DNA from: Octopus sinensis | Lineage: Eukaryota | Length of the DNA: 64,000 nucleotides | Reading direction: 5' to 3' | Assembly (NCBI RefSeq): GCF_006345805.1 | Contig: NC_042999.1 | Coordinates: 152,086,001-152,150,000 of the forward strand | Shown: piece by piece, positions 3,294 through 46,449 of the stretch | Position numbering within the stretch: position 1 is the stretch's first letter | How the letters are laid out: every line of letters begins with the position of its first letter | Position numbers and translations under genes: made by a program | The notes under the pieces: generated by a model | What the model was told of the DNA's origin: nothing | The model's input: only the letters and a program-made list of their open reading frames with translations | Databases searched by the model: none

Positions 3294-3552
3294 CTGGGTC
3301 ATCCCATAAATCATAAATAATGCAGTTTTTTTAATGCTTCTCTTTGTAACATAGGCACAAAACAATACTAAAATATACTCTCCCTCAGTTTCTACAATGC
3401 TCTTCCATCTATCTGATAGATTTGCAAGGCCCCTCTTCCAATATTCACTTGTCTGTGATGAAAAATACTCCTCCAGTACTGTTCTGACATCGTGTACAGG
3501 ATTCATATTTTTTCCATCCAAATGTTTCTGAAAACTTTGGAATAAATGGTAA
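3294..3552 (-). mobile_element. mariner transposase C-terminal relic with one terminus
   Basis: Minus strand reads YHLFQSFQKHLDGKNMNPVHDVRTVLEEYFSSQTSEYWKRGLANLSDRWKSIVETEGEYI. This matches the mariner C-terminal pattern (D)YHLFRSL..hL.GK.F...FF.S...FY..GI..L..RW.K.V...GEY. TA at 3292-3293 precedes a ctgggtcatcccataa terminus. 5'-truncated. Confidence 0.8.
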
Positions 3553-4032
3553 GTACAAGGTAAAATTACTACCTGCTTTTATAGCAAGTTTATGCAGGTA
3601 GTTTATCCCATCCCCGCTCTGCCTTTTAGTTCATGCAATTGGAAAACACATTATTTATAGGCTGAGGGAAGCAAAAGGAAACCACTCTCCCCAAGCATAT
3701 TTTTCAAAGTTGGACCCTCTTCAATAATTTTTTTATCTCTTCAGTTCGCTTGTGCTATAGATCACTTTGCTTTTGTTAATCGCATGGATTTGGAAGAACT
3801 TTTTAAAGTTATTACTTTATTTGACCAACTTCCTATGTTTTTGAGCTGTTTGCCCAATCTCCTGTGATGTGTTGGTGGTGGCCAGGCATCATAACCTCTG
3901 GACCTAGGATGTCCTCGTGGAATTTCATCTTTTTCACGTCTCACCTATATCAGTAGTTGTAAGTTTCACACATGACATTGTTAATGGAACATGAAATTAA
4001 TGAATGTAGAATACAATTTCATTAGTTATAAC

Positions 4033-9062: not shown

Positions 9063-9600
9063 CTTGTGAAGACCTGTTGAGGCAAGTGAAAATCAAATCA
9101 AAACAAATCAAAATAGATGAACATCAATGGAATTTGTATCTTTGTGGTACCAGTGCCGGTGGCACACAAGAAAATCATCCGAACGTGGCCGTAGCCAGTA
9201 CCGCATAGACTGGCCTCCGTGCTTTGGGGACGTAACAAACACCATCCGATCGTGGCCGTCCGCCAGCCTCATCTGGCACCTGTGTCGGTGGCACATAAAA
9301 ACACCATCCGAGCGTGGCCGTCTGCCAGCCTCGTCTGGCACCTGTGTCGGTGGCACATAAAAACACCATCCGAGCGTGGCCGTTCGCCAGCCTCGTCTGG
9401 CACCTGTGTCGGTGGCACATAAAATCACCCACTACACTCTCGGAGTGGTTGGCGTTAGGAAGGGCATCCAGCTGTAGAAACACTGCCAGATCTGACTGGC
9501 CTGGTGCAGCCTTCGGGCTCCCCAGACCCCAGTTGAACCATCCAACCCATGCTAGCATGGAAAACGGACGCTAAATGATGATGATGATGATGATGATGAC
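9063..9600 (+). mobile_element. (GAT)n-tailed retroposon, family C, with internal 62-bp tandem units
   Basis: Units start at 9237, 9297 and 9359. 3' end gagtggttggcgttaggaagggcatccagctgtagaaa...gcatggaaaacggacgctaaat(gat)n. Other copies at 10680-11050 (-), 14425-14707, 18510-18705, 27600-27778, 28699-29170, 31613-31872, 32760-32960 (-) and 46030-46353. Confidence 0.85.
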
Positions 9601-11374
9601 ATAGGTTGTATGGGTCAGCAAATTTAGACTTGATGTGTGTGTGTGTGTGTGTGTGTGTAGTTAATGATTCAATGAATGCGCTTCCTGATGTCAGCAACTT
9701 TATCATTAACTTATGTTCCTGCTGAGTACACATTGAAATATGTAGAGTAAGGTTATATATATTCACGCACTGAATTGCATAATCTGGTGCTTGTGACATG
9801 GTTTAAAGAACAAAAACAAAATATATGATACATAGAATATATTAATGAATTTACATTTTCTCTATTTTCTTTCTTATCCTTTGTTCTCTCACTCTCCCTT
9901 TTGATTTTTTTTGTATGCATGTGTTTTAGTCAGAGGAAAAGGGAGCAGGGCTTAAGATTGTTCACAGGGCTCTGGAACTGGTGGGCAGAAGTTATTCTTT
10001 GATTGGAAAACCTGGCATTATAATATCATTTTCTTACCTTTGTTTCAATTAACTATGAAAATAACTAAAGTAAAAGCTGGTGTTCAGAACATAAATTAAC
10101 ATGAAATTTTGATGGTAGTTCTTAAATTAGATCACTTTAGAATTAAACCTAGAAGTTTATATTGTAAAACCAGGGGTGGTTTTAGGCCAGTTGGTATCAA
10201 AAGTGTTAATGTCTGTAGTGTACTTTCCTAAAGGATATAAGTGCTTCATACTCAAAGTTTAAGTATTGGGCTTATGATCATATGTTTGCAGATTCAATCC
10301 CTGGACTGAGTGGTGTGTTGTGTCCTTGTTTCAGTCATTAGGCTGGAGCAATGCTTTGAAGAATTTTTTTGTCAACTGAATCAAACCTGGTACTTATTTT
10401 TTTTGCTGAACAGCTAAGTTCTGGGACATAAATGCACCAACACTGGTTGTCAAGTAGTGGTGGGGGACAAACGCAGGCACAAAGACACACACACACATGA
10501 CAGGCTTCATACTGTTTCCATCTGCCAAATCCACTCACAAGGCATTAGTCAGTCTGAGTCTATAGTAGAAGACTAAAGTACCACAAAGAGGAAATGAACC
10601 TGGAACCATGTGGTTCAAAAGCAAGCTTCTTACCACATGGCCACACCTGCACCATGTTGACAAACTTCCATACAGTGTCATCATCATTATAATCATCGTT
10701 TAACGTCCATTTTCCATGCTGGCATGGGTTGGACGGTTTGATTGGGGACTGGCAAGTCAGGAGGCTGCACCAGGTTCCAATGTAATCTGGCAATGTTTCT
10801 ACAGCTGGATACCCTTCCTAACACTAACCACTCCGAGAGTATAGTGGGTGCTTTTTATGTGCCACCGGCATGGGAGCCAGTCAGGTGGCACTGGCATCAA
10901 CCTTGTTTAGATGGTGCTTTTTACATACCACCGGCGCAGAAGCCAGTCGGGGCGATGGGGCTGACATCGACCACATTGGGATGGTGCTTTTTACGTGCCA
11001 CCGGCACAGGGAGCTGGTCAGGCAGCATATGAAACCATTGGTTGGCCTACAGCTCTAGCTGAAGATACCCGCCCAAGGAGCTGTGCAGAGGAAGTGAACT
11101 AGAATCCACCAGGCTGCAAAGCAAACTTCTTAACCATACAGCCATGCCTGTACCTATATTCATTCCACCAGTTATGATGTATGAGCTATTTTACAAATAC
11201 TCTTCACAAACCATGGCTTCGCCTCATGTAACAAGCTAGGTATTGGCCCACTTAGCGAATCAAATCCATATTAATCATTTAGGAAACATGATTATAAATT
11301 TACTTGTTCATTATTATTGAAATCGTTAAACTTTCTGTATTTTGTATGTATGCATTTCTTTCTAGCCTTTTGTT

Positions 11375-28698: not shown

Positions 28699-29170
28699 GC
28701 ACTATCCGACTCGTGGCCGTGGCACGTAAAATACTACAATGTGACCGTACGACAGGTACCCATGCCAACCCCCTTTGCTTGTGAAGACATGTTGGGGCAA
28801 GCGAAATTGAAATCGAAATCGAATTGAACCAGCCAGGATCCCTGGTCTGGTGGTACGTAAAAAGCACTATCCGACTCGTGGCCGATGCCAGCACCGCCTC
28901 GACTGGCTTCCGTGCCGGTGGCACATAAAATACACCAATCTGACCGTGGCCGTTGCCAGCCTCGCCTGGCACCTGTGCAGGTGGCATGTAAAAAGCACCC
29001 ACTACACTCACGGAGTGGTTGGCGTTAGGAAGGGCATCCAGCTGTAGAAACATTGCCAGATTAGACTGGAGCCTGGTGCAGCCTTCTGGCTTCCCAGAAC
29101 CCCGGTCGAACCGTCCAACCCATGCTAGCATGGAGAACGGACGTTAAACGATGATGATGATGATGATGAT
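28699..29170 (+). mobile_element. Family C retroposon inserted in a (TA)n tract
   Basis: Runs from gcactatccgactcgtggcc to a (gat)n tail and is CpG-rich (little decay). tatataaatgtatacatatatata occurs on both flanks (28675-28698, 29176-29199). Confidence 0.85.
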
Positions 29171-36813: not shown

Positions 36814-38210
36814 ATATATATATAATATAATATAATATAATATATAATATAATAAATAAATATATACAAAACCTTACCTTGATGTAATTTGTAATTCCAC
36901 TGAATAGATTAGTTTTAGCTCTCCTTTGTTCAAAGTCACCGATTACTCATAGCATTGACTCTATTTCAACAAGACTCGCACACAATTCATGAAGTTTGCC
37001 AGGTGGAGCTATGGACATTCCATCCAGCAGTTAACATCCAGGATACAATATGGTGTGTGTTGTTGAAATATAAAACCCATATTATTTGGTGGCTTCATGC
37101 ACCTTTCAAAGAATGTTTTTATAGATATATTGAACAATTTCTATTTTTATTTTTTTTAACTGTATTCTTCAAAGTACAGTATTCATAATCCAAAGTAGGT
37201 TTATTTATTTGTTTGTTGCATCCATTTGAAATACCATTTACATATAAGAAATGGTTAACAGAATTGTTAGCACCCTAGGCAAAATGCTGAATGGAATTTC
37301 ATGTCTTTACATTTTGATTTCAAATTCTACTGGGATTGACTTAGCCTTTCATCCTTTTGGGGACAATATAATAAGTAGCAGTTGAGTATTGGGGATGGGG
37401 TCGGTGTAATCAAATTACCCCCGCCCTAAAATTTGCTGGTCTTGTGCCAAAATTTGAAACCAATATAAGAAATCGTTAGAGATCCATTGGATGGAAAGTT
37501 TGGAAACTTTACCCTGAGAGCTGATGAATCAAGCCAAGCCAAGCTGGGGCACTGCCTTGAAGGGTTTCAAGTTGAACAAATCAACCCCAGGGCTTATTTT
37601 TTAAAGTCTGGCAATATTCTATTCATCTCTTTTCCTGAACTGCTGAGTTACTGAGGTGAAGTAGGGGCATAAGCAAGCCAATAGTGACTGTCAAACAGGG
37701 TAGGTGTAAGGGAAAACAAGCACAAAGATACACACACACACACACATACATGGTTGGCTTCCACCATATTTCTGTTCACCAAATCCACTCACAAGACATT
37801 GGTCAGTCTGAGGCTATAGTAGAAGACACTTGCTCAAGGTGCCACACTGTGGGACTGAACCTTAAACCACCACAGAATTTCAAAGTGAGCTTCTTAACCA
37901 CACAGCAATGCTTCCTGCTATGATAACAGCATTATAATTGCAACCCAGACAAACAATTGCTAAATAACAATAAAAACAATAATTGATGATTTATCGTTAG
38001 ACAGTAGGATGTTTTTCTTTTCTATGTTGCATTGTCAAACCTTTTCTCATAAATTTGATTGAAGATTATTTTATTTTCTCTGCATTAGTCTTAGAAAAAT
38101 ACTATATTTCATCTTAATTTTTTGCCTAGACCAAGCATAGGAATGCTTGGATCCATGACAACTCATATGAAGGCTCAAATTAACAGTCGACATGCATGTA
38201 CACATACTTT

Positions 38211-38400
38211 TGTAACAGAAGTTTAATCCACAACATGAAAATTTCACAATATATACTTTGTTTTGTCGAAAAGTCTTGTCAGAGGCTGAAGTAGTAGAAC
38301 TGGCTTGTTGCACAAAACTACTTTAGCCCCTGATAGGACCTTTGGGCAAACAAAGTATATGTTGTCAGATTTTCATGTTGTGGATTAAATTTCTGATACA
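38211..38400. other. 190-nt fold-back (85/84-nt arms, 21-nt loop)
   Basis: Arm 38211-38295 vs reverse complement of 38317-38400: 12 mismatches and 1 gap (about 85% identity). Confidence 0.9.
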
Positions 38401-38619: not shown

Positions 38620-39488
38620 TAGGGTGCAATGGGTAAATTGTTGCATTTTATATATTTTAATTTTGTGCATGTACATTGTTTGTTTTTGATTTCTGTCGAC
38701 TACATAGTATAGTAGGGTCAGTTGGGCACTGTCTGAGAAAAACAGTACCATGATGACATTCACTTTGCCAGAAATTTGGAAACAACATGCTGTACTGCTT
38801 GGCATTTGTGCCAGAAACTCTAATAAGAACAAATGGTGAACACACAGAACAATTGTTGGCTTGCTGTGTCCCCAAAACATGTACCAAGAGTGATAAAAAT
38901 CAAACATCCAATCATCATCATGGTGTTCACTAGTGATCACTAGTGATGGTGACGTTATGACTCCATTTAGCTTCTCACACAGCCTCAGGCTCAACATGGA
39001 AGAGATAGTGCTGCCCTGGGTCAAGAGGATAGCTGCTAGAAGATCCTTATGTCTGGCAACAGGACTCTGCACCATGTCACACAAGTGGGAGAACCTAGTC
39101 ATGGCTGTCAGACAATTTCTGTGACCACATCACCCCTAACATCTGACCTCCTAGCTCCCTAAACTGCAACCCCCTTGATTATTATGTTGGATGCACAGTT
39201 GAGCGAGAGACCAACAAAACTCCATGTAACACCAAAGATGAACTGAAGGCAAGGGTTATGGCAGGATTCACCAACTTAAACAAGGAGACCATCCAGAAGA
39301 GTTGCAGGAGATTCTGAAGTCGTCTGGAGGCCATGGTTGAAGCCAATGGTGATTTCATTAAATAAATTTACTCTTTAGTATTTCCAGATATTTTTGTGTT
39401 ATTTTGGTAAATATATCTGTAAAAATGAGACGTCAGTGTTATTTTCATTTTTGTGTAATTTAGACGACAGTTTATTCACTGCACCCTG
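38620..39488 (+). mobile_element. Tc1/mariner DD37D (maT/mori-type) transposon, internally deleted and inactive
   Basis: Imperfect TIRs agggtgcaatgggtaaattgttg vs agggtgcagtgaataaactgtcg (18/23); TA at 38618-38619. Frame 39048-39365 reads YVWQQDSAPCHTSGRT*SWLSDNFCDHITPNI*PPSSLNCNPLDYYVGCTVERETNKTPCNTKDELKARVMAGFTNLNKETIQKSCRRF*SRLEAMVEANGDFIK*, with 37 residues between D (39063) and D (39177). Upstream pieces NTQNNCWLAVSPKHVPRVIKIKHPIIIMVF and VITSDGDVMTPF fit the same family. Confidence 0.85.
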
Positions 39489-39695
39489 TGTGTGTGTATA
39501 TTAATGTTTATTTTTATATCCAGTTTCAGCTTGCTAGCCTTCATTTGACACACGGACACACACACACACACACACACTCACACACACATAAGGGGCAACT
39601 GAAGACTAGACAACAGTTATAAAATTTAATAACATCAGTGTTTTAACATAGACGATATATACATACATATATATGTATATATATATATATATATA

Positions 39696-39902
39696 ATGTG
39701 ACCACGTGTGTACCGTTGGTGATTTTTTTCCCTCCGTCTTCCCTTCATTGGATCTTTCCTCTCCCTATGTTTCTGAGGAAGAGCTCTGCTCGAAACGTTA
39801 AATCCTCCTTCTTTCTTTCCTTTCCTGAGAGTCCAATAACACTATACTTGTTCCATGTCCTCGCGTTGTGTTTTCTCTTTATGTTTTCATGTTTGGATTA
39901 AC
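39696..39902 (+). mobile_element. Solo Penelope-type terminal repeat flanked by (TA)n (copy 1; copy 2 at 41093-41299)
   Basis: About 205-bp pyrimidine-rich unit between (TA)n tracts, carrying a minimal hammerhead core. Same architecture as the terminal part of 7913-8340. Confidence 0.6.
39769..39803 (+). ncRNA. Minimal type I hammerhead ribozyme motif (copy 1)
   Basis: gttt-CTGAGGA-a-GAGC-tct-GCTC-GAAA-cg-T-T-aaat. Core boxes are intact; stem II is GAGC/GCTC; stem I is gttt/aaat (3 WC + 1 GU); stem III is reduced to a self-complementary AACGTT. Confidence 0.6.
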
Positions 39903-40599
39903 TATATATATATAATTTGATAGCATCAACTGTCTGCTTTGTGTGTGTGTGTGTGTGTGTGTGTGTTTCTAAAAGAATTGTATTTCTTTAAAGAAAGTAG
40001 TGAAATATAATGTAAAATTTTGTTATTACTTTATTAAATCATTTTCCCATTGTAGCCTATTTTACGGTGTTTAAGTAGTTTCAGATGAAATTCTACTAGA
40101 ACTTGTGTAAACAAACAAACACCCACCACACTGCGTTTTCAAAATTGTCACATCTGTGATACAAACACGACTTCATACTATTATTTAGCTATGGCGCCCT
40201 GGCTGGGATAAGCTGTATTTTGCACTTAATGACCTTGCAGAATCTTTCCCCTCTCTCTATTAACAAATAAAAATACCACAAAAATTGGGATGAGTCTCTA
40301 TTGAAGTTAGTAACTTTTTACACAATGCTTTGAATATTTGTACCATTTGTCCTTCCCTGGCTTCCGCATCTGAAAATCGTTCACCTAAATCCCAACCTTC
40401 CCCTCATGTTTAACTTAAAAATAGCTCTGTCATAAAGGACCAACAACTCTTTTTATTTTTCTTGTAACCTAATCTTTCTGTCCAGTAATTTCATTGAATA
40501 ATTTCCTCAGTTTCATTAGATTCATTCCTCCAGTTTTTCTTTTTAGATTTTTTTTAATATATATTTATGCTTTATTATTTTTTTCTATCTTAATTTCCT

Positions 40600-40644
40600 C
40601 TTAATGAATTGTTTTTTTTTTATCTTCTCCCATTTCAGGTAAGT
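40600..40644 (+). other. Candidate recursive splice site (3'ss immediately followed by 5'ss), copy 1
   Basis: Branch-like CTTAAT (40600-40605); 23/25 pyrimidines at 40612-40636; AG 40637-40638; GTAAGT 40639-40644; no AG from 40547 to 40636. Confidence 0.5.
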
Positions 40645-41165
40645 TTCGCCATTCATGTTTTGTTTGTGTTCCAACAAAAAGAAAAAAAAAAAAAAGAAAG
40701 AACACACCACTAAAGCCAAGTACAGGAAATCCAAACTGTTTTCATATTTGGTTCCTGATTCCCAATAGTAAGGTATGTATGGTATGAATTCTTTCTGAAA
40801 AAAATAAATACATAAACAAAGGAAAAAGGTTATTGAGGACATTTTAAGAACAAGTGTTTTTGTAATGTTGTGAAAGGTACAGAAGAAGGGAAGCAGAATA
40901 TTAATGTTGTAGTTGGGGCCCTTTATTGTTATTTACACTAAGATTATTTATATTCCTAGTTGGGTTTTTTTGGGTTTTTTTTTTTCAGCAATGATTCATT
41001 TTAACTGTAATATTTAAGTAGATTGAATTAATGGAGACTGGAAAAAGTCCATCTTGTGTGTGTATGTGTGAATATATATATATATATATATAATGTGACC
41101 ACGTGTGTACCGTTGGTGATTTTTTTCCCTCCGTCTTCCCTTCATTGGATCTTTCCTCTCCCTAT

Positions 41166-41200
41166 GTTTCTGAGGAAGAGCTCTGCTCGAAACGTTAAAT
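41166..41200 (+). ncRNA. Minimal type I hammerhead ribozyme motif (copy 2, identical)
   Basis: gtttctgaggaagagctctgctcgaaacgttaaat, identical to 39769-39803. Confidence 0.6.
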
Positions 41201-41992
41201 CCTCCTTCTTTCTTTCCTTTCCTGAGAGTCCAATAACACTATACTTGTTCCATGTCCTCGCGTTGTGTTTTCTCTTTATGTTTTCATGTTTGGATTAACT
41301 ATATATATATATAATTTGATAGCATCAACTGTCTGCTTTGTGTGTGTGTGTGTGTGTGTTTCTAAAAGAATTGTATTTCTTTAAAGAAAGTAGTGAAATA
41401 TAATGTAAAATTTTGTTATTACTTTATTAAATCATTTTCCCATTGTAGCCTATTTTACGGTGTTTAAGTAGTTTCAGATGAAATTCTACTAGAACTTGTG
41501 TAAACAAACAAACACCCACCACACTGCGTTTTCAAAATTGTCACATCTGTGATACAAACACTACTTCATACTATTATTTAGCTATGGCGTCCTGGCTGGG
41601 ATAAGCTGTATTTTGCACTTAATGACCTTGCAGAATCTTTCCCCTCTCTCTATTAACAAATAAAAATACCACAAAAATTGGGATGAGTCTCTATTGAAGT
41701 TAGTAACTTTTTACACAATGCTTTGAATATTTGTACCATTTGTCCTTCCCTGGCTTCCGCATCTGAAAATCGTTCACCTAAATCCCAACCTTCCCCTCAT
41801 GTTTAACTTAAAAATAGCTCTGTCATAAAGGACCAACAACTCTTTTTATTTTTCTTGTAACCTAATCTTTCTGTCCAGTAATTTCATTGAATAATTTCCT
41901 CAGTTTCATTAGATTCATTCCTCCAGTTTTTCTTTTTAGATTTTTTTAAATATATATTTATGCTTTATTATTTTTTTCTTTCTTAATTTCCT

Positions 41993-42037
41993 CTTAATGA
42001 ATTGTTTTTTTTTTATCTTCTCCCATTTCAGGTAAGT
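41993..42037 (+). other. Candidate recursive splice site, copy 2
   Basis: cttaatgaattg(t)n-atcttctcccatttcAG|GTAAGT; AG at 42030-42031. Confidence 0.45.
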
Positions 42038-42683
42038 TTCGCCATTCATGTTTTGTTTGTGTTCCAACAAAAAGAAAAAAAAAAAAAAAAAAGAAAGAAC
42101 ACACCACTAAAGCCAAGTACAGGAAATCCAAACTGTTTTCATATTTGGTTGTGATTCCCAATAGTAAGGTATGTATGGTATGAATTCTTTCTGAAAAAAA
42201 TAAATACATAAACAAAGGAAAAAGGTTATTGAGGACATTTTAAGAACAAGTGTTTTTGTAATGTTGTGAAAGGTACAGAAGAAGGGAAGCAGAATATTAA
42301 TGTTGTAGTTGGGGCCCTTTATTGTTATTTACACTAAGATTATTTATATTCCTAGTTGGGTTTTTTTGGGTTTTTTTTTTTCAGCAATGATTCATTTTAA
42401 CTGTAATATTTAAGTAGATTGAATTAATGGAGACTGGAAAAAGTCCATCTTGTGTGTGTATGTGTGAATATATATATATATATATATATATCACCTTGAT
42501 CACCGTGACCGACCAGGCTAACACATCGCTGGTCACAATGCGCTTCACATTGTTTTAGCCTTGAAATGACGCCACCCCGCTGGCTAAGCGAGCAGGCCAA
42601 TATCTATCTATATATATATATATGTATATATGTAATCATCATCATCATCATTTAACATCTGTTGTCCATACTGGCATGACATT

Positions 42684-43164: not shown

Positions 43165-43323
43165 GGCGCAGGAGTGGCTGTGTGGTAAGTAGCTTGCTAA
43201 CCAACCACATGGTTCCGGGTTCCCACTGCGTGGCATCTTGGGCAAGTGTCTTCTGCTATAGCCCCGGGCCGACCAATGCCTTGTGAGTGGATTTGGTAGA
43301 CGGAAACTGAAAGAAGCCTGTCG

Positions 43324-43563: not shown

Positions 43564-46449
43564 TATATATGTGCACCAGACGTTAAATGATAATGATGAT
43601 GATGATATATATATCATTCAACTATGGTAGTAGTTGAATGATATTCTTAAGGCCACAATTTACTCACAAGCAGCATCTTTCAGAGCTTGTCACTAATTCA
43701 GTTCTTAACCAAGTTGAAAACTGTTAACAGTTTTGAAGAGGACTAGTCCCCAGTTACATTTAGGTATAAAAAAATTGAGATTTGATCCAGTAGAAAAAAG
43801 TATACATCAAAATTTGTAGCAACATTACAGGAGAGTAACACCACCAATCAAGTTTAGATCTAAACTTTTTTAGTTTGAAAGCAAAATATATTTATCTTAG
43901 CTTCAATGATAGAAGAAAGCATGAAAAATTTCATAGTTTTGTTCCCATGCAACAAAAATTTCTATCGAAAAGGTTGAGGTAAAATATCATGAAAAAATAT
44001 AAGTAAGGCAAAAAATTGGATGTAAGTATAATTAACTTTTTTTATTTTAAAAACAACCATGCATGTACATACATATTTATACATGCACACACACATACAC
44101 GATAGAATTTTTTAGTTTCCATCTACCAATATCACACAAGGTTATTATTGGTTGACCCATGGCTATACTATATGATGCTACCCCGATAACATTCATACAT
44201 CATTCATGCAAGGAGATTGAACTGCCACCCACTTGGCTCTGGAGTAAATTTCTCTAATGATATAAGAAATCATTTCCATCTCTTCAATTTAAGAATTAGC
44301 TTAAGTTTGACATATCTGACTTTTCTGTTTTGTAGTAATTTCAGAAACAAATGATATCGTCACATCCTAAACAAAAAAACAAAATATTATAATAATAATA
44401 ATGAATAGAAGACAGGAAAAATGAAGTAGCTGTTACCAGTGTTCAGAAAAGTTTACAGATGATTTCGTATTTTAACACCAATTGTTAGTTTTGTTTTCGT
44501 TTTTGTGTTTTGTTTGTGTGTTTGTGTGTGTTTGCTTTAACAGTAGAAATTGTCAATGTCAGAAAATTGTCTGAATGACAATCGAATTGGATTTTCAAGT
44601 ATTTAATTCTGTTTGGTGTGATATTTTTTTTTTCCTCTTTTACTTCATTTAAGCGATATCTATTCAATTTTGGCAAGTGTAGAAATGTTTAAATTCATTT
44701 CACTGATTCACTAACTTCAATTCTAAATATGCATAAACTCAATTTAGCTGAAATAATAGAAACAGAATTAAGAAGACACTAAATGTTTTTCTTTTTCCTT
44801 TTTCATGTATGCACACACAACTATATATCTCACAAATTGTTGCTTAACCCTAGGTTAGTCCTGATTAAGTACACAGTATGGTAATATACAAAAAGTGGGT
44901 TAAGTGAAATATAAGCAAAAGAACTTTTACATGTTTTAGAAATTAATTTTCTCTCTTCTTAATAATGAAAATCTTACAGTTTGGTAAATGGATTATTGTA
45001 TCACAGATCCACTGACTGGAATAATACATTTGTCTTGGGGTCTATCTCTAATTGAAAGAAGCTGCTTTCATCATCATTATCATCATTGTCATTGCCGTCA
45101 TCATCTTCATCACTGTAATCATCATCATTATCATCATCATCATCATCATTTCTTTTAATGTCCACTTTTCCATGCTTGCAAGAGTCAGATTGAATTCATG
45201 GAGACAGACTTTCTGCAACCGGATGGATGCCCTTCCAGTCACCAACCTTCATTTGTTTCCAAGAAAGAGTAATAATATTTCCCTATGGTTAGATATGTTT
45301 CTATGGAAGATTGGAAACAAATGACACTACTTGTACAACAGTGACACTCATTTACAACTATTATTACATCTTTTTAATAATGATAATTCACATTTATAAA
45401 ATCTCACCAATTTCAGTAGCTAAAACAAAAACTACGGGAAGGTATTCATGAGTTTATTTTAGCTCCTTGAATATTTTTGACTTTGTGTCATTTGTTTTTA
45501 TGTCCATTTTTCCATGTTAGCATGTGATAAATGAATGTTATTGAGGTATTGCCTATATTTCAATTAAGGGATCCTTTATTCACATAGCTTCAAAGGCACC
45601 GAGTGAGTGGTTGATTTATTGGCAAGAGATGTTCCAAGTAGAACACTGTCGTATAAGCAGGTGAAAATGTAAATAATACACTTATATACAAGTGCATGTG
45701 CACACACACACACACACACATTCACATGCACACATTTATATGTGTATATGATAGGCTTTTTCTGTTTCCATCCTACCAAATTGACTCACAAGACATTTGT
45801 TGGCTCAGGGGCTCGTTTAAGGTGTTATGCAGTAGGACTGAACTCCAGACCACATAACTGGGAAGTAACCTTCTTAATTGCAGTGCCAAATCGCTTACTA
45901 AATTAAAAGATGAGAATAAAGAGGAAGAAGTATTTAGTAAACTAAATTTATTTAATGCAACAAGGAGCATCTGTAGAATGAATCTTGTAGGTTCGTTGTT
46001 GAGTTCTTGGAATTTATGCATGTCACCTGACTGGTCCCATGCCAGTGGCACATAAACAGCACCATTCCAGCATGTTTGTTGCCAGTGTCGCCTGACTGGC
46101 TCCCATGCTGGTGGCATGTAAAAAGCATTATCCAAGCATGGTCGATGCCAGTACTGCTTGACTGGCTCTTGTGCCAGTGGCATGTAAAAAGCACCCACTA
46201 CACTCTCATAGTGGTTGGTGTTAGGAGGAGCATCCAGCTGTAGAAACTTTGCCAGATCGGATTGGAGCCTGGTGCAGCCATCTGGCTTGCCAGCCCTCAG
46301 TCAAGCCATCAAACCCATGCCAGCATGGAAAGCGGACGTTAAACAATGATGATGAAACTCAAAATTTGACTTGTTTCTTCACAGTATTCCAATTTCGTTT
46401 CAAATACTTCCTCTTACAAAGGTTTCTTTAGTCAAATCAACTGCATTAA

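What the first reader, a model, noticed from the sequence alone, without database searches (positions are those of the whole stretch)
40547..40778. Textbook recursive-splicing ratchet point with a cryptic RS-exon
Seen: a 90-nt AG-free zone (40547-40636), branch-like CTTAAT 35 nt upstream, 23/25 pyrimidines, then CAG directly abutting a perfect GTAAGT donor. Downstream sit two more donors, GTAAGG (40768) and AG|GTATGT (40773), defining a 129-134-nt segment with a stop in frame 0 and a poly-A run whose length differs between the duplicated copies, so it is unlikely to code. It was the only such AG|GT junction (with its duplicate) I found on either strand by eye. Established: zero-nucleotide AG|GT ratchet points, defined through a cryptic RS-exon, subdivide long introns in Drosophila and in long vertebrate neuronal genes. 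Inference: this window is part of a giant + strand intron removed in steps. I know of no characterisation of this in cephalopods, but cannot check.
Basis: partly seen in the sequence, partly recalled or inferred. Interest (0 to 1): 0.75.

Follow-up and report, generated by a model that had tools for sequence, protein, structure and literature searches.

The report
Candidate recursive splice site in octopus
A near-perfect back-to-back splice acceptor and donor sits, in two recently duplicated copies, in exon-free octopus DNA whose + strand looks transcribed, so it is a credible but unproven recursive splice site.

Summary
The sequence is as described. A 90-nt AG-free zone, TTAAT branch candidates, 23/25 pyrimidines, then CAG|GTAAGT at 40638/40639, with weaker donors 129 and 134 nt downstream. 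A second copy lies at 42032, inside a 1.4-kb tandem duplication with 5 substitutions between copies.

It is by far the best joined acceptor/donor among 333 AGGT sites in the window (12.4 bits; next best 6.1). A site this good still arises by chance in about 0.5-4% of 64-kb windows, which means hundreds per octopus genome. The motif alone therefore proves nothing.

Context is favourable:
- SINE matches identify the DNA as octopus.
- No coding exon was found in the window.
- The + strand shows the T>A skew, G>C skew and AATAAA depletion that I measured on the sense strand of three annotated Octopus vulgaris genes.

No orthologous sequence or RNA data could be reached, so conservation and usage are untested.

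My estimates:
- About 0.38 that it is used as a recursive splice site.
- About 0.47 that it is an unused motif, either untranscribed or ignored by the spliceosome.
- About 0.10 that it is an ordinary exon edge.

If real, it is a new member of a known kind. Interest is modest.

The parts
40547..40636 (+). AG-exclusion zone (90 nt) upstream of the acceptor. Contains the branch candidates and the pyrimidine tract.
   Evidence: Direct reading. An AG count of 1 in 40547-40638, which is the terminal AG itself.
40601..40605 (+). TTAAT branch-point candidate (YTNAY). Branch A at 40604, 34 nt before the acceptor G. A second TTAAT lies at 40590-40594 (A at 40593, 45 nt).
   Evidence: Direct reading. Consensus match only; no lariat data.
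40612..40636 (+). Polypyrimidine tract, 23 of 25 pyrimidines, with TT at -5/-6.
   Evidence: count. Only 4 YAG sites on both strands reach 23/25, and 2 of them are this site and its copy.
40636..40644 (+). Core CAG|GTAAGT, with the junction between 40638 and 40639. Proposed ratchet point, copy 1.
   Evidence: It is the best donor on the + strand (8.6 bits) and among the top-10 acceptors of 3,509 AG. Joint score is 12.4 bits against 6.1 for the next best.
40639..40772 (+). Putative cryptic RS-exon, 134 nt (129 nt if the GTAAGG donor is used). Contains an A-rich run at 40676-40700.
   Evidence: stops in 2 of 3 frames and a length that is not a multiple of 3. No protein homolog.
40768..40778 (+). 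Two overlapping downstream donors: ATA|GTAAGG (GT at 40768, 0.9 bits) and AAG|GTATGT (GT at 40773, 4.8 bits). Both are weaker than the ratchet donor.
42029..42037 (+). Core CAG|GTAAGT of copy 2, with GT at 42032.
42032..42168 (+). Putative RS-exon of copy 2, 137 nt. Donors at 42164 (GTAAGG) and 42169 (GTATGT).
   Evidence: It differs from copy 1 by +4 A, a 1-nt deletion and 1 substitution.
39676..42488 (.). Two-copy tandem duplication of a 1,397-bp unit (39676-41092 and 41073-42488). The borders lie in (TA)n microsatellite.
   Evidence: 98.7% identity over 1,423 columns, with 5 substitutions. The other differences are microsatellite/homopolymer indels and one 1-nt deletion. The unit has no match in 61.7 kb of other octopus loci.

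Best explanation
The site is a recursive splice site of the zero-nucleotide 'ratchet point' type, lying in a long + strand intron of an octopus gene whose exons are outside the window.

Proposed steps:
1. The strong acceptor (branch A near 40604 or 40593, T-rich tract, CAG) and the weaker donor 134 nt downstream (AAG|GTATGT) are recognised together as a cryptic exon. This step is inferred.
2. The upstream exon is spliced to 40639. This places GTAAGT directly after the exon and regenerates a near-optimal 5' splice site.
3. That donor outcompetes the weaker RS-exon donor. The 134-nt segment and the rest of the intron are then removed in the next step, so nothing of the site remains in mRNA.
4. 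The recent tandem duplication would add a second, identical ratchet point 1,393 nt downstream, splitting off one extra short segment.

What is shown: the motif anatomy, its uniqueness in the window, the absence of detectable exons, and a sense-strand-like asymmetry of the + strand.

What is inferred: that the + strand is transcribed as an intron, that the spliceosome uses the site, and that use is selected rather than incidental. I put a selected, constitutive ratchet point at only about 0.25. Any detectable recursive use is about 0.38.
For: - Anatomy: a 90-nt AG-free zone, YTNAY branch candidates at 34 and 45 nt, 23/25 pyrimidines, TT at -5/-6, and CAG|GTAAGT. Of 197 Drosophila ratchet points, 196 have TT at -5/-6.
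- Ranking: the site is the best donor on the + strand and a top-10 acceptor. Its joint score is 12.4 bits, against 6.1 for the next best of 333 AGGT sites. No site above 8.0 bits exists in 61.7 kb of other octopus loci.
- RS-exon: the downstream donor exists and is weaker (4.8 vs 8.6 bits). The RS-exon is out of frame with stops. Both fit the cryptic RS-exon and donor-competition model.
- No exon: the locus ORFs and the 60 longest non-repeat ORFs have no homologs. There is no significant Pfam hit among 377 ORFs. Only 5 ORFs have even weak acceptor/donor pairs.
- + strand signature: AATAAA occurs 56 times on + and 102 on -, or 47 vs 85 in the part not repeated within the window. + is lower in 7 of 8 bins, and this is the most skewed of the A5T1 hexamers. 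In the non-repeated part, T>A is 4.6%, G>C is 2.0%, and AGGTRAG occurs 0 times on + and 8 on -.
- Calibration: the same signature appears on the sense strand of three annotated O. vulgaris gene segments (T>A 4.2-5.6%; AATAAA:TTTATT 15:33). It is absent from 14 kb of non-genic flank (17:17; T>A 0.8%).
- Human precedent: 60% of conserved, strong-acceptor AGGT sites in long introns have recursive junction reads in deep data.
Against: - There is no RNA evidence of any kind and no orthologous sequence, so the two strongest criteria for known ratchet points (junction/sawtooth reads and ultraconservation) are untested.
- The host gene is not identified.
- The strand-asymmetry calibration rests on only 21 kb from three genes. 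Intergenic DNA can also be skewed.
- Sites of equal matrix score arise in 1.5-4.1% of simulated windows, i.e. hundreds per genome.
- The RS-exon is 134 nt against ~50 nt in flies, and its best donor is only moderate.
- The acceptor tract is low-complexity T-rich sequence, which is common in this AT-rich genome.
- Two of the five substitutions between the duplicated copies fall inside the 90-nt acceptor zone (40555, 40587). That shows no sign of special constraint there, although five events are far too few to test.
- Recursive splicing has not been reported in cephalopods in the searched literature.
Confidence: 0.38

Rival explanations
1. Inert chance motif. The window is not transcribed on the + strand (it is intergenic or inside a - strand gene). 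The juxtaposed acceptor/donor is then a fortuitous product of T-rich, AT-rich neutral sequence with no role.
For: - The chance expectation is not negligible. 1.5-4.1% of simulated 64-kb windows carry a site at least as good, and the empirical-marginal estimate is about 0.005 per window. That means hundreds per 2-3 Gb genome.
- No gene, exon or transcript could be tied to the window.
- The site sits in a very young tandem duplication bordered by microsatellites, among SINEs and a transposon remnant. This is typical of neutrally evolving DNA.
Against: - The + strand carries the same T>A, G>C and AATAAA-depletion signature as the sense strand of annotated O. vulgaris genes. A non-genic flank does not.
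- AATAAA is lower on + in 7 of 8 bins.
- A - strand gene is strongly disfavoured by the same data.
Confidence: 0.25
2. Ignored decoy. The window is a + strand intron, but the spliceosome does not use the site at a meaningful level. Possible reasons are no exon-definition support, a weak downstream donor, or silencers. It would be one of many pseudo splice sites in long introns.
For: - The downstream donor is only moderate (4.8 bits) and lies 134 nt away. The other donor is very weak (0.9 bits).
- The putative RS-exon is A-rich low complexity.
- In human, of 36,870 putative sites only 342 were candidates in nascent RNA data and 16 showed a sawtooth pattern. Strong use is therefore rare even among conserved motif matches.
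Against: - Both halves of the motif are near-optimal, and the acceptor has a long AG-free zone with branch candidates.
- 60% of human putative sites have at least some recursive junction reads in deep data.
- AGGTRAG is otherwise absent from the part of the + strand not repeated within the window (0 vs 8 on the - strand). A strong donor-like site here is therefore unusual.
Confidence: 0.22
3. Ordinary exon edge. Either 40638 is the donor end of an unannotated T-rich non-coding or UTR exon, or 40639-40772 is a real, sometimes-included non-coding, poison or lncRNA exon whose first bases happen to read GTAAGT (an 'expressed RS-exon').
For: - CAG|GTAAGT is also the plain optimal 5' splice site, and the acceptor plus a donor 134 nt downstream is the plain anatomy of a cassette exon.
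- Mammals have thousands of expressed exons that begin with a donor-like sequence.
Against: - No homolog or annotated protein covers the segment.
- It has stops in 2 of 3 frames, and a 4-nt poly-A length difference plus a 1-nt deletion between the two copies.
- The sequence upstream of 40638 is very T-rich and has no recognisable promoter or acceptor context of its own.
- With a perfect donor at its own 5' end, the segment would be expected to be skipped by donor competition.
Confidence: 0.1
4. The second copy is an assembly artefact: two haplotypes laid in tandem. Only one site would then exist. This concerns copy number, not function, and is compatible with any of the explanations above.
For: The copies differ by 5 substitutions in about 1.4 kb (about 0.35%) plus microsatellite-length changes, and the borders lie in (TA)n repeats. 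I judge that level to be of the order of allelic difference. This is an inference, since no heterozygosity figure was retrieved.
Against: Microsatellite-mediated unequal exchange gives the same picture in real genomes. No reads are available to test it.
Confidence: 0.15

Closest known systems
Drosophila intronic ratchet points (zero-nucleotide recursive splice sites with cryptic RS-exons; Hatton 1998, Burnette 2005, Duff 2015, Joseph 2018/2021, Pai 2018)
   Same: - Juxtaposed strong acceptor and GTAAGT donor at AG|GT, a prominent pyrimidine tract and TT at -5/-6.
- A downstream weaker donor defines a short, out-of-frame, non-coding cryptic exon.
- The apparent location is exon-free DNA of a long transcription unit.
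   Different: - The RS-exon is 134-137 nt rather than ~50 nt.
- There is no evidence of conservation, junction reads, sawtooth pattern or lariats.
- The host intron is not identified.
- The genome is about 20 times larger, so chance matches are far more numerous.
Vertebrate recursive splice sites in long neuronal genes (Sibley 2015; Blazquez 2018; Zhang 2018)
   Same: - An AGGT motif with a strong 3' splice site in a very long, repeat-rich intron-like region of a large genome.
- RS-exon definition by a downstream 5' splice site that is weaker than the reconstituted one.
- The RS-exon carries stop codons.
   Different: Vertebrate sites were defined by junction reads, sawtooth coverage and PhastCons conservation, none of which is available here. 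Only a handful of fully suppressed intronic sites are well established in vertebrates.
Pseudo (decoy) splice sites and pseudoexons in long introns
   Same: A consensus-quality acceptor/donor pair in non-coding DNA with no annotated exon. Its frequency is compatible with chance at genome scale.
   Different: Decoys rarely combine a top-ranked acceptor with a perfect donor at the same phosphodiester bond. This is the single outlier among 333 AGGT sites in the window.

Membership tests
Intronic ratchet point / recursive splice site | Juxtaposed consensus 3' splice site (pyrimidine tract, YAG) and 5' splice site (GTRAGT) around AG|GT | tested here: met
   23/25 pyrimidines followed by CAG|GTAAGT. 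Joint weight-matrix score is 12.4 bits, the best of 333 AGGT sites by more than 6 bits.
Intronic ratchet point / recursive splice site | TT at positions -5 and -6 of the acceptor (196 of 197 Drosophila ratchet points) | tested here: met
   The sequence ...ccaTTtcag|gt has T at -5 and -6.
Intronic ratchet point / recursive splice site | Lies on the sense strand inside a long intron of an expressed gene | tested here: inconclusive
   - No exon was found in the 64 kb.
- The + strand shows the sense-strand signature calibrated on three O. vulgaris genes.
- The host gene and intron ends are not identified.
Intronic ratchet point / recursive splice site | Downstream 5' splice site defining a cryptic RS-exon, weaker than the ratchet donor. 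The exon is non-coding or out of frame. | tested here: met
   - AAG|GTATGT lies at +134 nt (4.8 bits) and GTAAGG at +129 nt (0.9 bits), against 8.6 bits for the ratchet donor.
- There are stops in 2 of 3 frames, and the length is 134/137 nt.
- The length exceeds the ~50 nt typical in flies.
Intronic ratchet point / recursive splice site | Strong evolutionary conservation of the SA|SD motif against diverged flanks | not testable with these tools
   - No orthologous locus was reachable. Exact-protein look-ups failed.
- The locus ORFs have no homologs.
- The metagenome scan for the core 21-mer found nothing.
- The in-window duplicate is too young to inform.
Intronic ratchet point / recursive splice site | RNA evidence: junction reads from the upstream exon to the site, sawtooth intronic coverage, and lariats to and from the site | not testable with these tools
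Ordinary coding cassette exon | Open reading frame conserved in homologous proteins | tested here: not met
   There are stops in 2 of 3 frames. The open frame is shifted between the two copies by the poly-A indel. It has no homolog at E<=0.001.
Dispersed repeat / transposable-element-borne motif | The motif-bearing unit recurs elsewhere in the window or in other octopus DNA | tested here: not met
   The 1.4-kb unit matches only its tandem copy in the window. It matches nothing significant in 61.7 kb of other octopus loci, although 22.5% of the window does match repeats there. The sample is small.

The most novel reading that the evidence does not exclude
Octopuses remove giant introns with fly-type zero-nucleotide ratchet points. 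This locus would also have caught one in the act of being tandemly duplicated, giving two identical ratchet points 1.4 kb apart. That would be a natural experiment on how recursive sites are born, duplicated and tolerated. It would also be the first recursive splicing described in a lophotrochozoan.
Probability: 0.25. Interest if true: 0.55.

Novelty: new member of a known kind. Interest (0 to 1): 0.35.

Why it matters
Recursive splicing is documented in flies and vertebrates. I found no paper that describes it in cephalopods. Octopus neuronal genes are nevertheless among the longest in invertebrates (PMC7222433).

A validated site would extend the mechanism to a third bilaterian branch. It would also give a handle on how very long introns are processed in a large invertebrate brain.

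A single motif does not establish that. The practical value of this finding is as a seed for a genome-wide, strand-aware census and an RNA-seq check.

Tried and rejected
1. Exact-protein look-ups of two ORFs at the locus, to fetch other assemblies or transcripts. Neither is on record.
2. Homology search with 1,093 aa of ORFs from the duplicated unit, to find orthologous loci or transcripts. No hit.
3. Scan of JGI metagenome contigs for the 21-nt core, in case of host contamination. No hit.
4. Exon hunt:
   - Pfam on 377 non-repeated ORFs of at least 40 aa gave only chance-level hits (best E about 0.003 per ORF, across 377 ORFs).
   - A 4,899-aa concatenate of the 60 longest ORFs had no homolog. 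Sensitivity of a concatenated query is uncertain. It also missed transposase fragments, one of which a shorter query then matched.
   - A splice-site pair scan found only 5 weak candidates.
6. Rfam and tRNA scans found nothing.
7. I considered that the motif belongs to a SINE, to the Tc1/mariner remnant at 38750-39362, or to an element bounded by the inverted repeat 37769-37854 / 43221-43306.
   - The transposase match ends about 1.3 kb upstream of the site.
   - The translated inverted-repeat arms look like oppositely oriented SINE copies (read by eye).
   - The unit is not repeated elsewhere.
8. I considered SINE orientation bias as a strand indicator. I dropped it because the polarity and independence of the copies could not be established.
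9. The first Markov simulation timed out. I redid it in vectorised form.
10. A look-up of the O. bimaculoides protein P0018 for more calibration sequence found nothing on record.

Full report
**Observation**

- After the AG at 40545-46 there is no AG for 90 nt (40547-40636).
- Two CTTAAT motifs lie in this zone, at 40589-94 and 40600-05. TTAAT fits the YTNAY branch consensus, with branch adenosines at 40593 and 40604, which are 45 and 34 nt before the acceptor G.
- The 25 nt ending at the C of CAG are 23/25 pyrimidines, with TT at -5/-6.
- CAG (40636-38) abuts GTAAGT (40639-44).
- Downstream donors are ATA|GTAAGG (GT at 40768) and AAG|GTATGT (GT at 40773), giving segments of 129 and 134 nt.
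- The segment has stops in two frames. The third frame is open, but a 4-A length difference and a 1-nt deletion between the copies shift what it encodes. Lengths are 134 and 137 nt, neither a multiple of three.

**The two copies are one event**

The site and its twin at 42032 lie in a two-copy tandem duplication of a 1,397-bp unit (39676-41092 and 41073-42488). The borders fall in (TA)n microsatellite. The copies differ by five substitutions (40169, 40197, 40555, 40587, 40755). The rest is microsatellite or homopolymer length changes and one 1-nt deletion.

The duplication is therefore very recent, or an assembly artefact. Identity of the motif in both copies says nothing about constraint. The unit is not a dispersed repeat. 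It matches only its twin in the window and nothing significant in 61.7 kb of other octopus loci, although 22.5% of the window matches repeats there.

**Is it more than chance?**

- CAGGTAAGT occurs nowhere else on either strand.
- Only 4 of 7,293 AG dinucleotides are YAG with at least 23/25 upstream pyrimidines, and two of those are this site and its twin. Only 3 AG are followed by GTAAGT, and two of those are again this site and its twin.
- I scored sites with a simple matrix that joins the intronic halves of a 3' and a 5' splice-site profile. The profile values are approximate, taken from memory of published tables, and were used only for ranking. The site scores 12.4 bits. The next best of 333 AGGT sites scores 6.1 on the - strand and 4.2 on the + strand. 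Nothing exceeds 8.0 bits in three other octopus or octopus-like loci.
- The product of empirical marginals gives about 0.001 to 0.005 expected sites per window.
- Markov simulations give at least one site of at least 12.4 bits in 1.5% (order 3) and 4.1% (order 5, overfitted) of 64-kb windows.

The site is a clear outlier in this window. In a genome of roughly 2.7 Gb, though, several hundred equally good sites are expected by chance. The motif alone cannot carry the interpretation.

**What organism and what context**

A SINE-derived reading frame from the window matches 'Hypothetical predicted protein [Octopus vulgaris]' at 77% identity, and also an O. bimaculoides entry. At least a dozen copies of this element are in the window.

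I found no coding exon:
- ORFs of the duplicated unit have no homolog.
- The 60 longest non-repeated ORFs have none. A concatenated query may lose sensitivity.
- The 377 non-repeated ORFs give only chance-level Pfam hits.
- Only five ORFs contain even a weak acceptor/donor pair.
- There are no Rfam families and no tRNAs.

A Tc1/mariner-type transposase remnant lies at 38750-39362 on the + strand. It ends about 1.3 kb upstream of the site and is not part of the duplicated unit.

**Is the + strand transcribed?**

| Measure | + strand | - strand | Source |
|---|---|---|---|
| AATAAA, second tandem copy removed | 56 | 102 | |
| AATAAA, part not repeated within the window | 47 | 85 | |
| AGGTRAG, part not repeated within the window | 0 | 8 | |

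- AATAAA is lower on + in 7 of 8 bins. It is the most skewed of the six A5T1 hexamers, and the most skewed hexamer that is not obviously repeat-derived.
- The part not repeated within the window has T>A by 4.6% and G>C by 2.0% on the + strand.

To learn what these measures look like in octopus, I used two O. vulgaris chromosome loci that the SINE hits happened to bring in.

| Sequence | T>A | G>C | AATAAA:TTTATT |
|---|---|---|---|
| Three annotated gene segments, sense strand, 21 kb in all | 4.2-5.6% | 0.1-5.6% | 15:33 |
| Non-genic flank, 14 kb | 0.8% | -1.2% | 17:17 |

The window's + strand therefore looks like the sense strand of an octopus transcription unit, and a - strand gene is disfavoured. 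The calibration is small and intergenic DNA can be skewed for other reasons. I put + strand transcription at about 0.7.

**Comparison with known recursive sites**

- The motif matches the fly ratchet-point consensus, down to the TT at -5/-6 that 196 of 197 fly sites have.
- The current model requires a cryptic RS-exon bounded by a downstream donor that is weaker than the regenerated one. The exon content is poorly conserved and usually out of frame. Here the donors score 8.6 against 4.8 bits, and the segment is out of frame with stops.
- The 134-nt length is larger than the ~50 nt typical of flies.
- In human, 36,870 conserved strong-acceptor AGGT sites in long introns were called putative sites. 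Of these, 60% have some recursive junction reads in 70 billion ENCODE reads, 342 were candidates in nascent RNA data, and 16 show a sawtooth pattern. So low-level use of strong sites is common, and dominant use is rare.
- The two criteria that actually define known sites are conservation and RNA intermediates. Neither could be tested here.

**Weighing**

If the + strand is a long intron (about 0.7), I estimate a site this strong is used recursively at a detectable level slightly more often than not. That gives about 0.38 for recursive use, and about 0.25 for a selected, constitutive ratchet point.

The alternatives:
- Inert motif in DNA that is not transcribed on the + strand: about 0.25.
- Decoy in a real intron that the spliceosome ignores: about 0.22.
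- Ordinary non-coding exon edge: about 0.10.

Recursive splicing is the single most likely mechanism. The 'not used' alternatives together are somewhat more likely than use.

**Novelty**

In the searched library, no paper combines recursive splicing with octopus. One paper mentions cephalopods incidentally. If confirmed, this would be a new member of a known kind in a new clade, which would be welcome but not surprising to specialists.

The decisive tests are simple and are listed under next steps.

Noticed in passing
window 39676-42488: A two-copy tandem duplication of a 1,397-bp unit with its borders in (TA)n microsatellite. The copies differ by 5 substitutions plus microsatellite and homopolymer indels. 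It is either a very recent unequal-exchange event or two haplotypes assembled in tandem.
   Followed up: partly
window 38750-39362 (+): Fragmented Tc1/mariner-type transposase remnant. The C-terminal 118 aa are 72% identical to a 349-aa HTH_23-domain protein from a Logan contig (P0002). Earlier parts are broken into frame-shifted pieces.
   Followed up: partly
window 3294-3578 (-): An ORF that reads by eye like the C-terminal end of a mariner-type transposase (...NGKNMNP...YWKRGLANLSDRWKSIVETEGEYI). Neither Pfam nor the concatenated homology search confirmed it.
   Followed up: partly
whole window, e.g. 9131-9574 (-), 10685-11084 (+), 28878-29150 (-), 46067-46357 (-): At least a dozen copies of a SINE-like element. 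Its translated frames match 'hypothetical proteins' of Octopus vulgaris and O. bimaculoides, which identifies the taxon. Some copies carry a 66-bp tandem repeat (46021-46195, 2.7 copies).
   Followed up: partly
whole window, + versus - strand: Strand asymmetry is typical of a sense strand. AATAAA occurs 56 times on + and 102 on -. T>A is 4.6% and G>C is 2.0% in the part not repeated within the window. AGGTRAG occurs 0 times on + and 8 on -. Three annotated O. vulgaris gene segments show the same pattern (21 kb only).
   Followed up: partly
window 38211-38263 and 38348-38400: An inverted repeat with 53-nt arms, 91% complementary, separated by 84 nt. It could be a small foldback or MITE-like element, or a long hairpin.
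   Followed up: no
window 37769-37854 and 43221-43306: An 86-nt inverted repeat pair, 85% complementary, bracketing 5.4 kb that includes the transposon remnant and the duplication. By translated content, the arms look like two SINE copies in opposite orientation rather than the ends of one element.
   Followed up: partly
L003 12904-15840 (ENA assembly ERZ21867824, contig ctg122869l): The ENA 'metagenome' collection holds long contigs (up to 466 kb) that carry octopus-like SINE frames and an intact-looking 978-aa LINE ORF (endonuclease plus reverse transcriptase). This is apparently a cephalopod-like genome assembly filed there.
   Followed up: no
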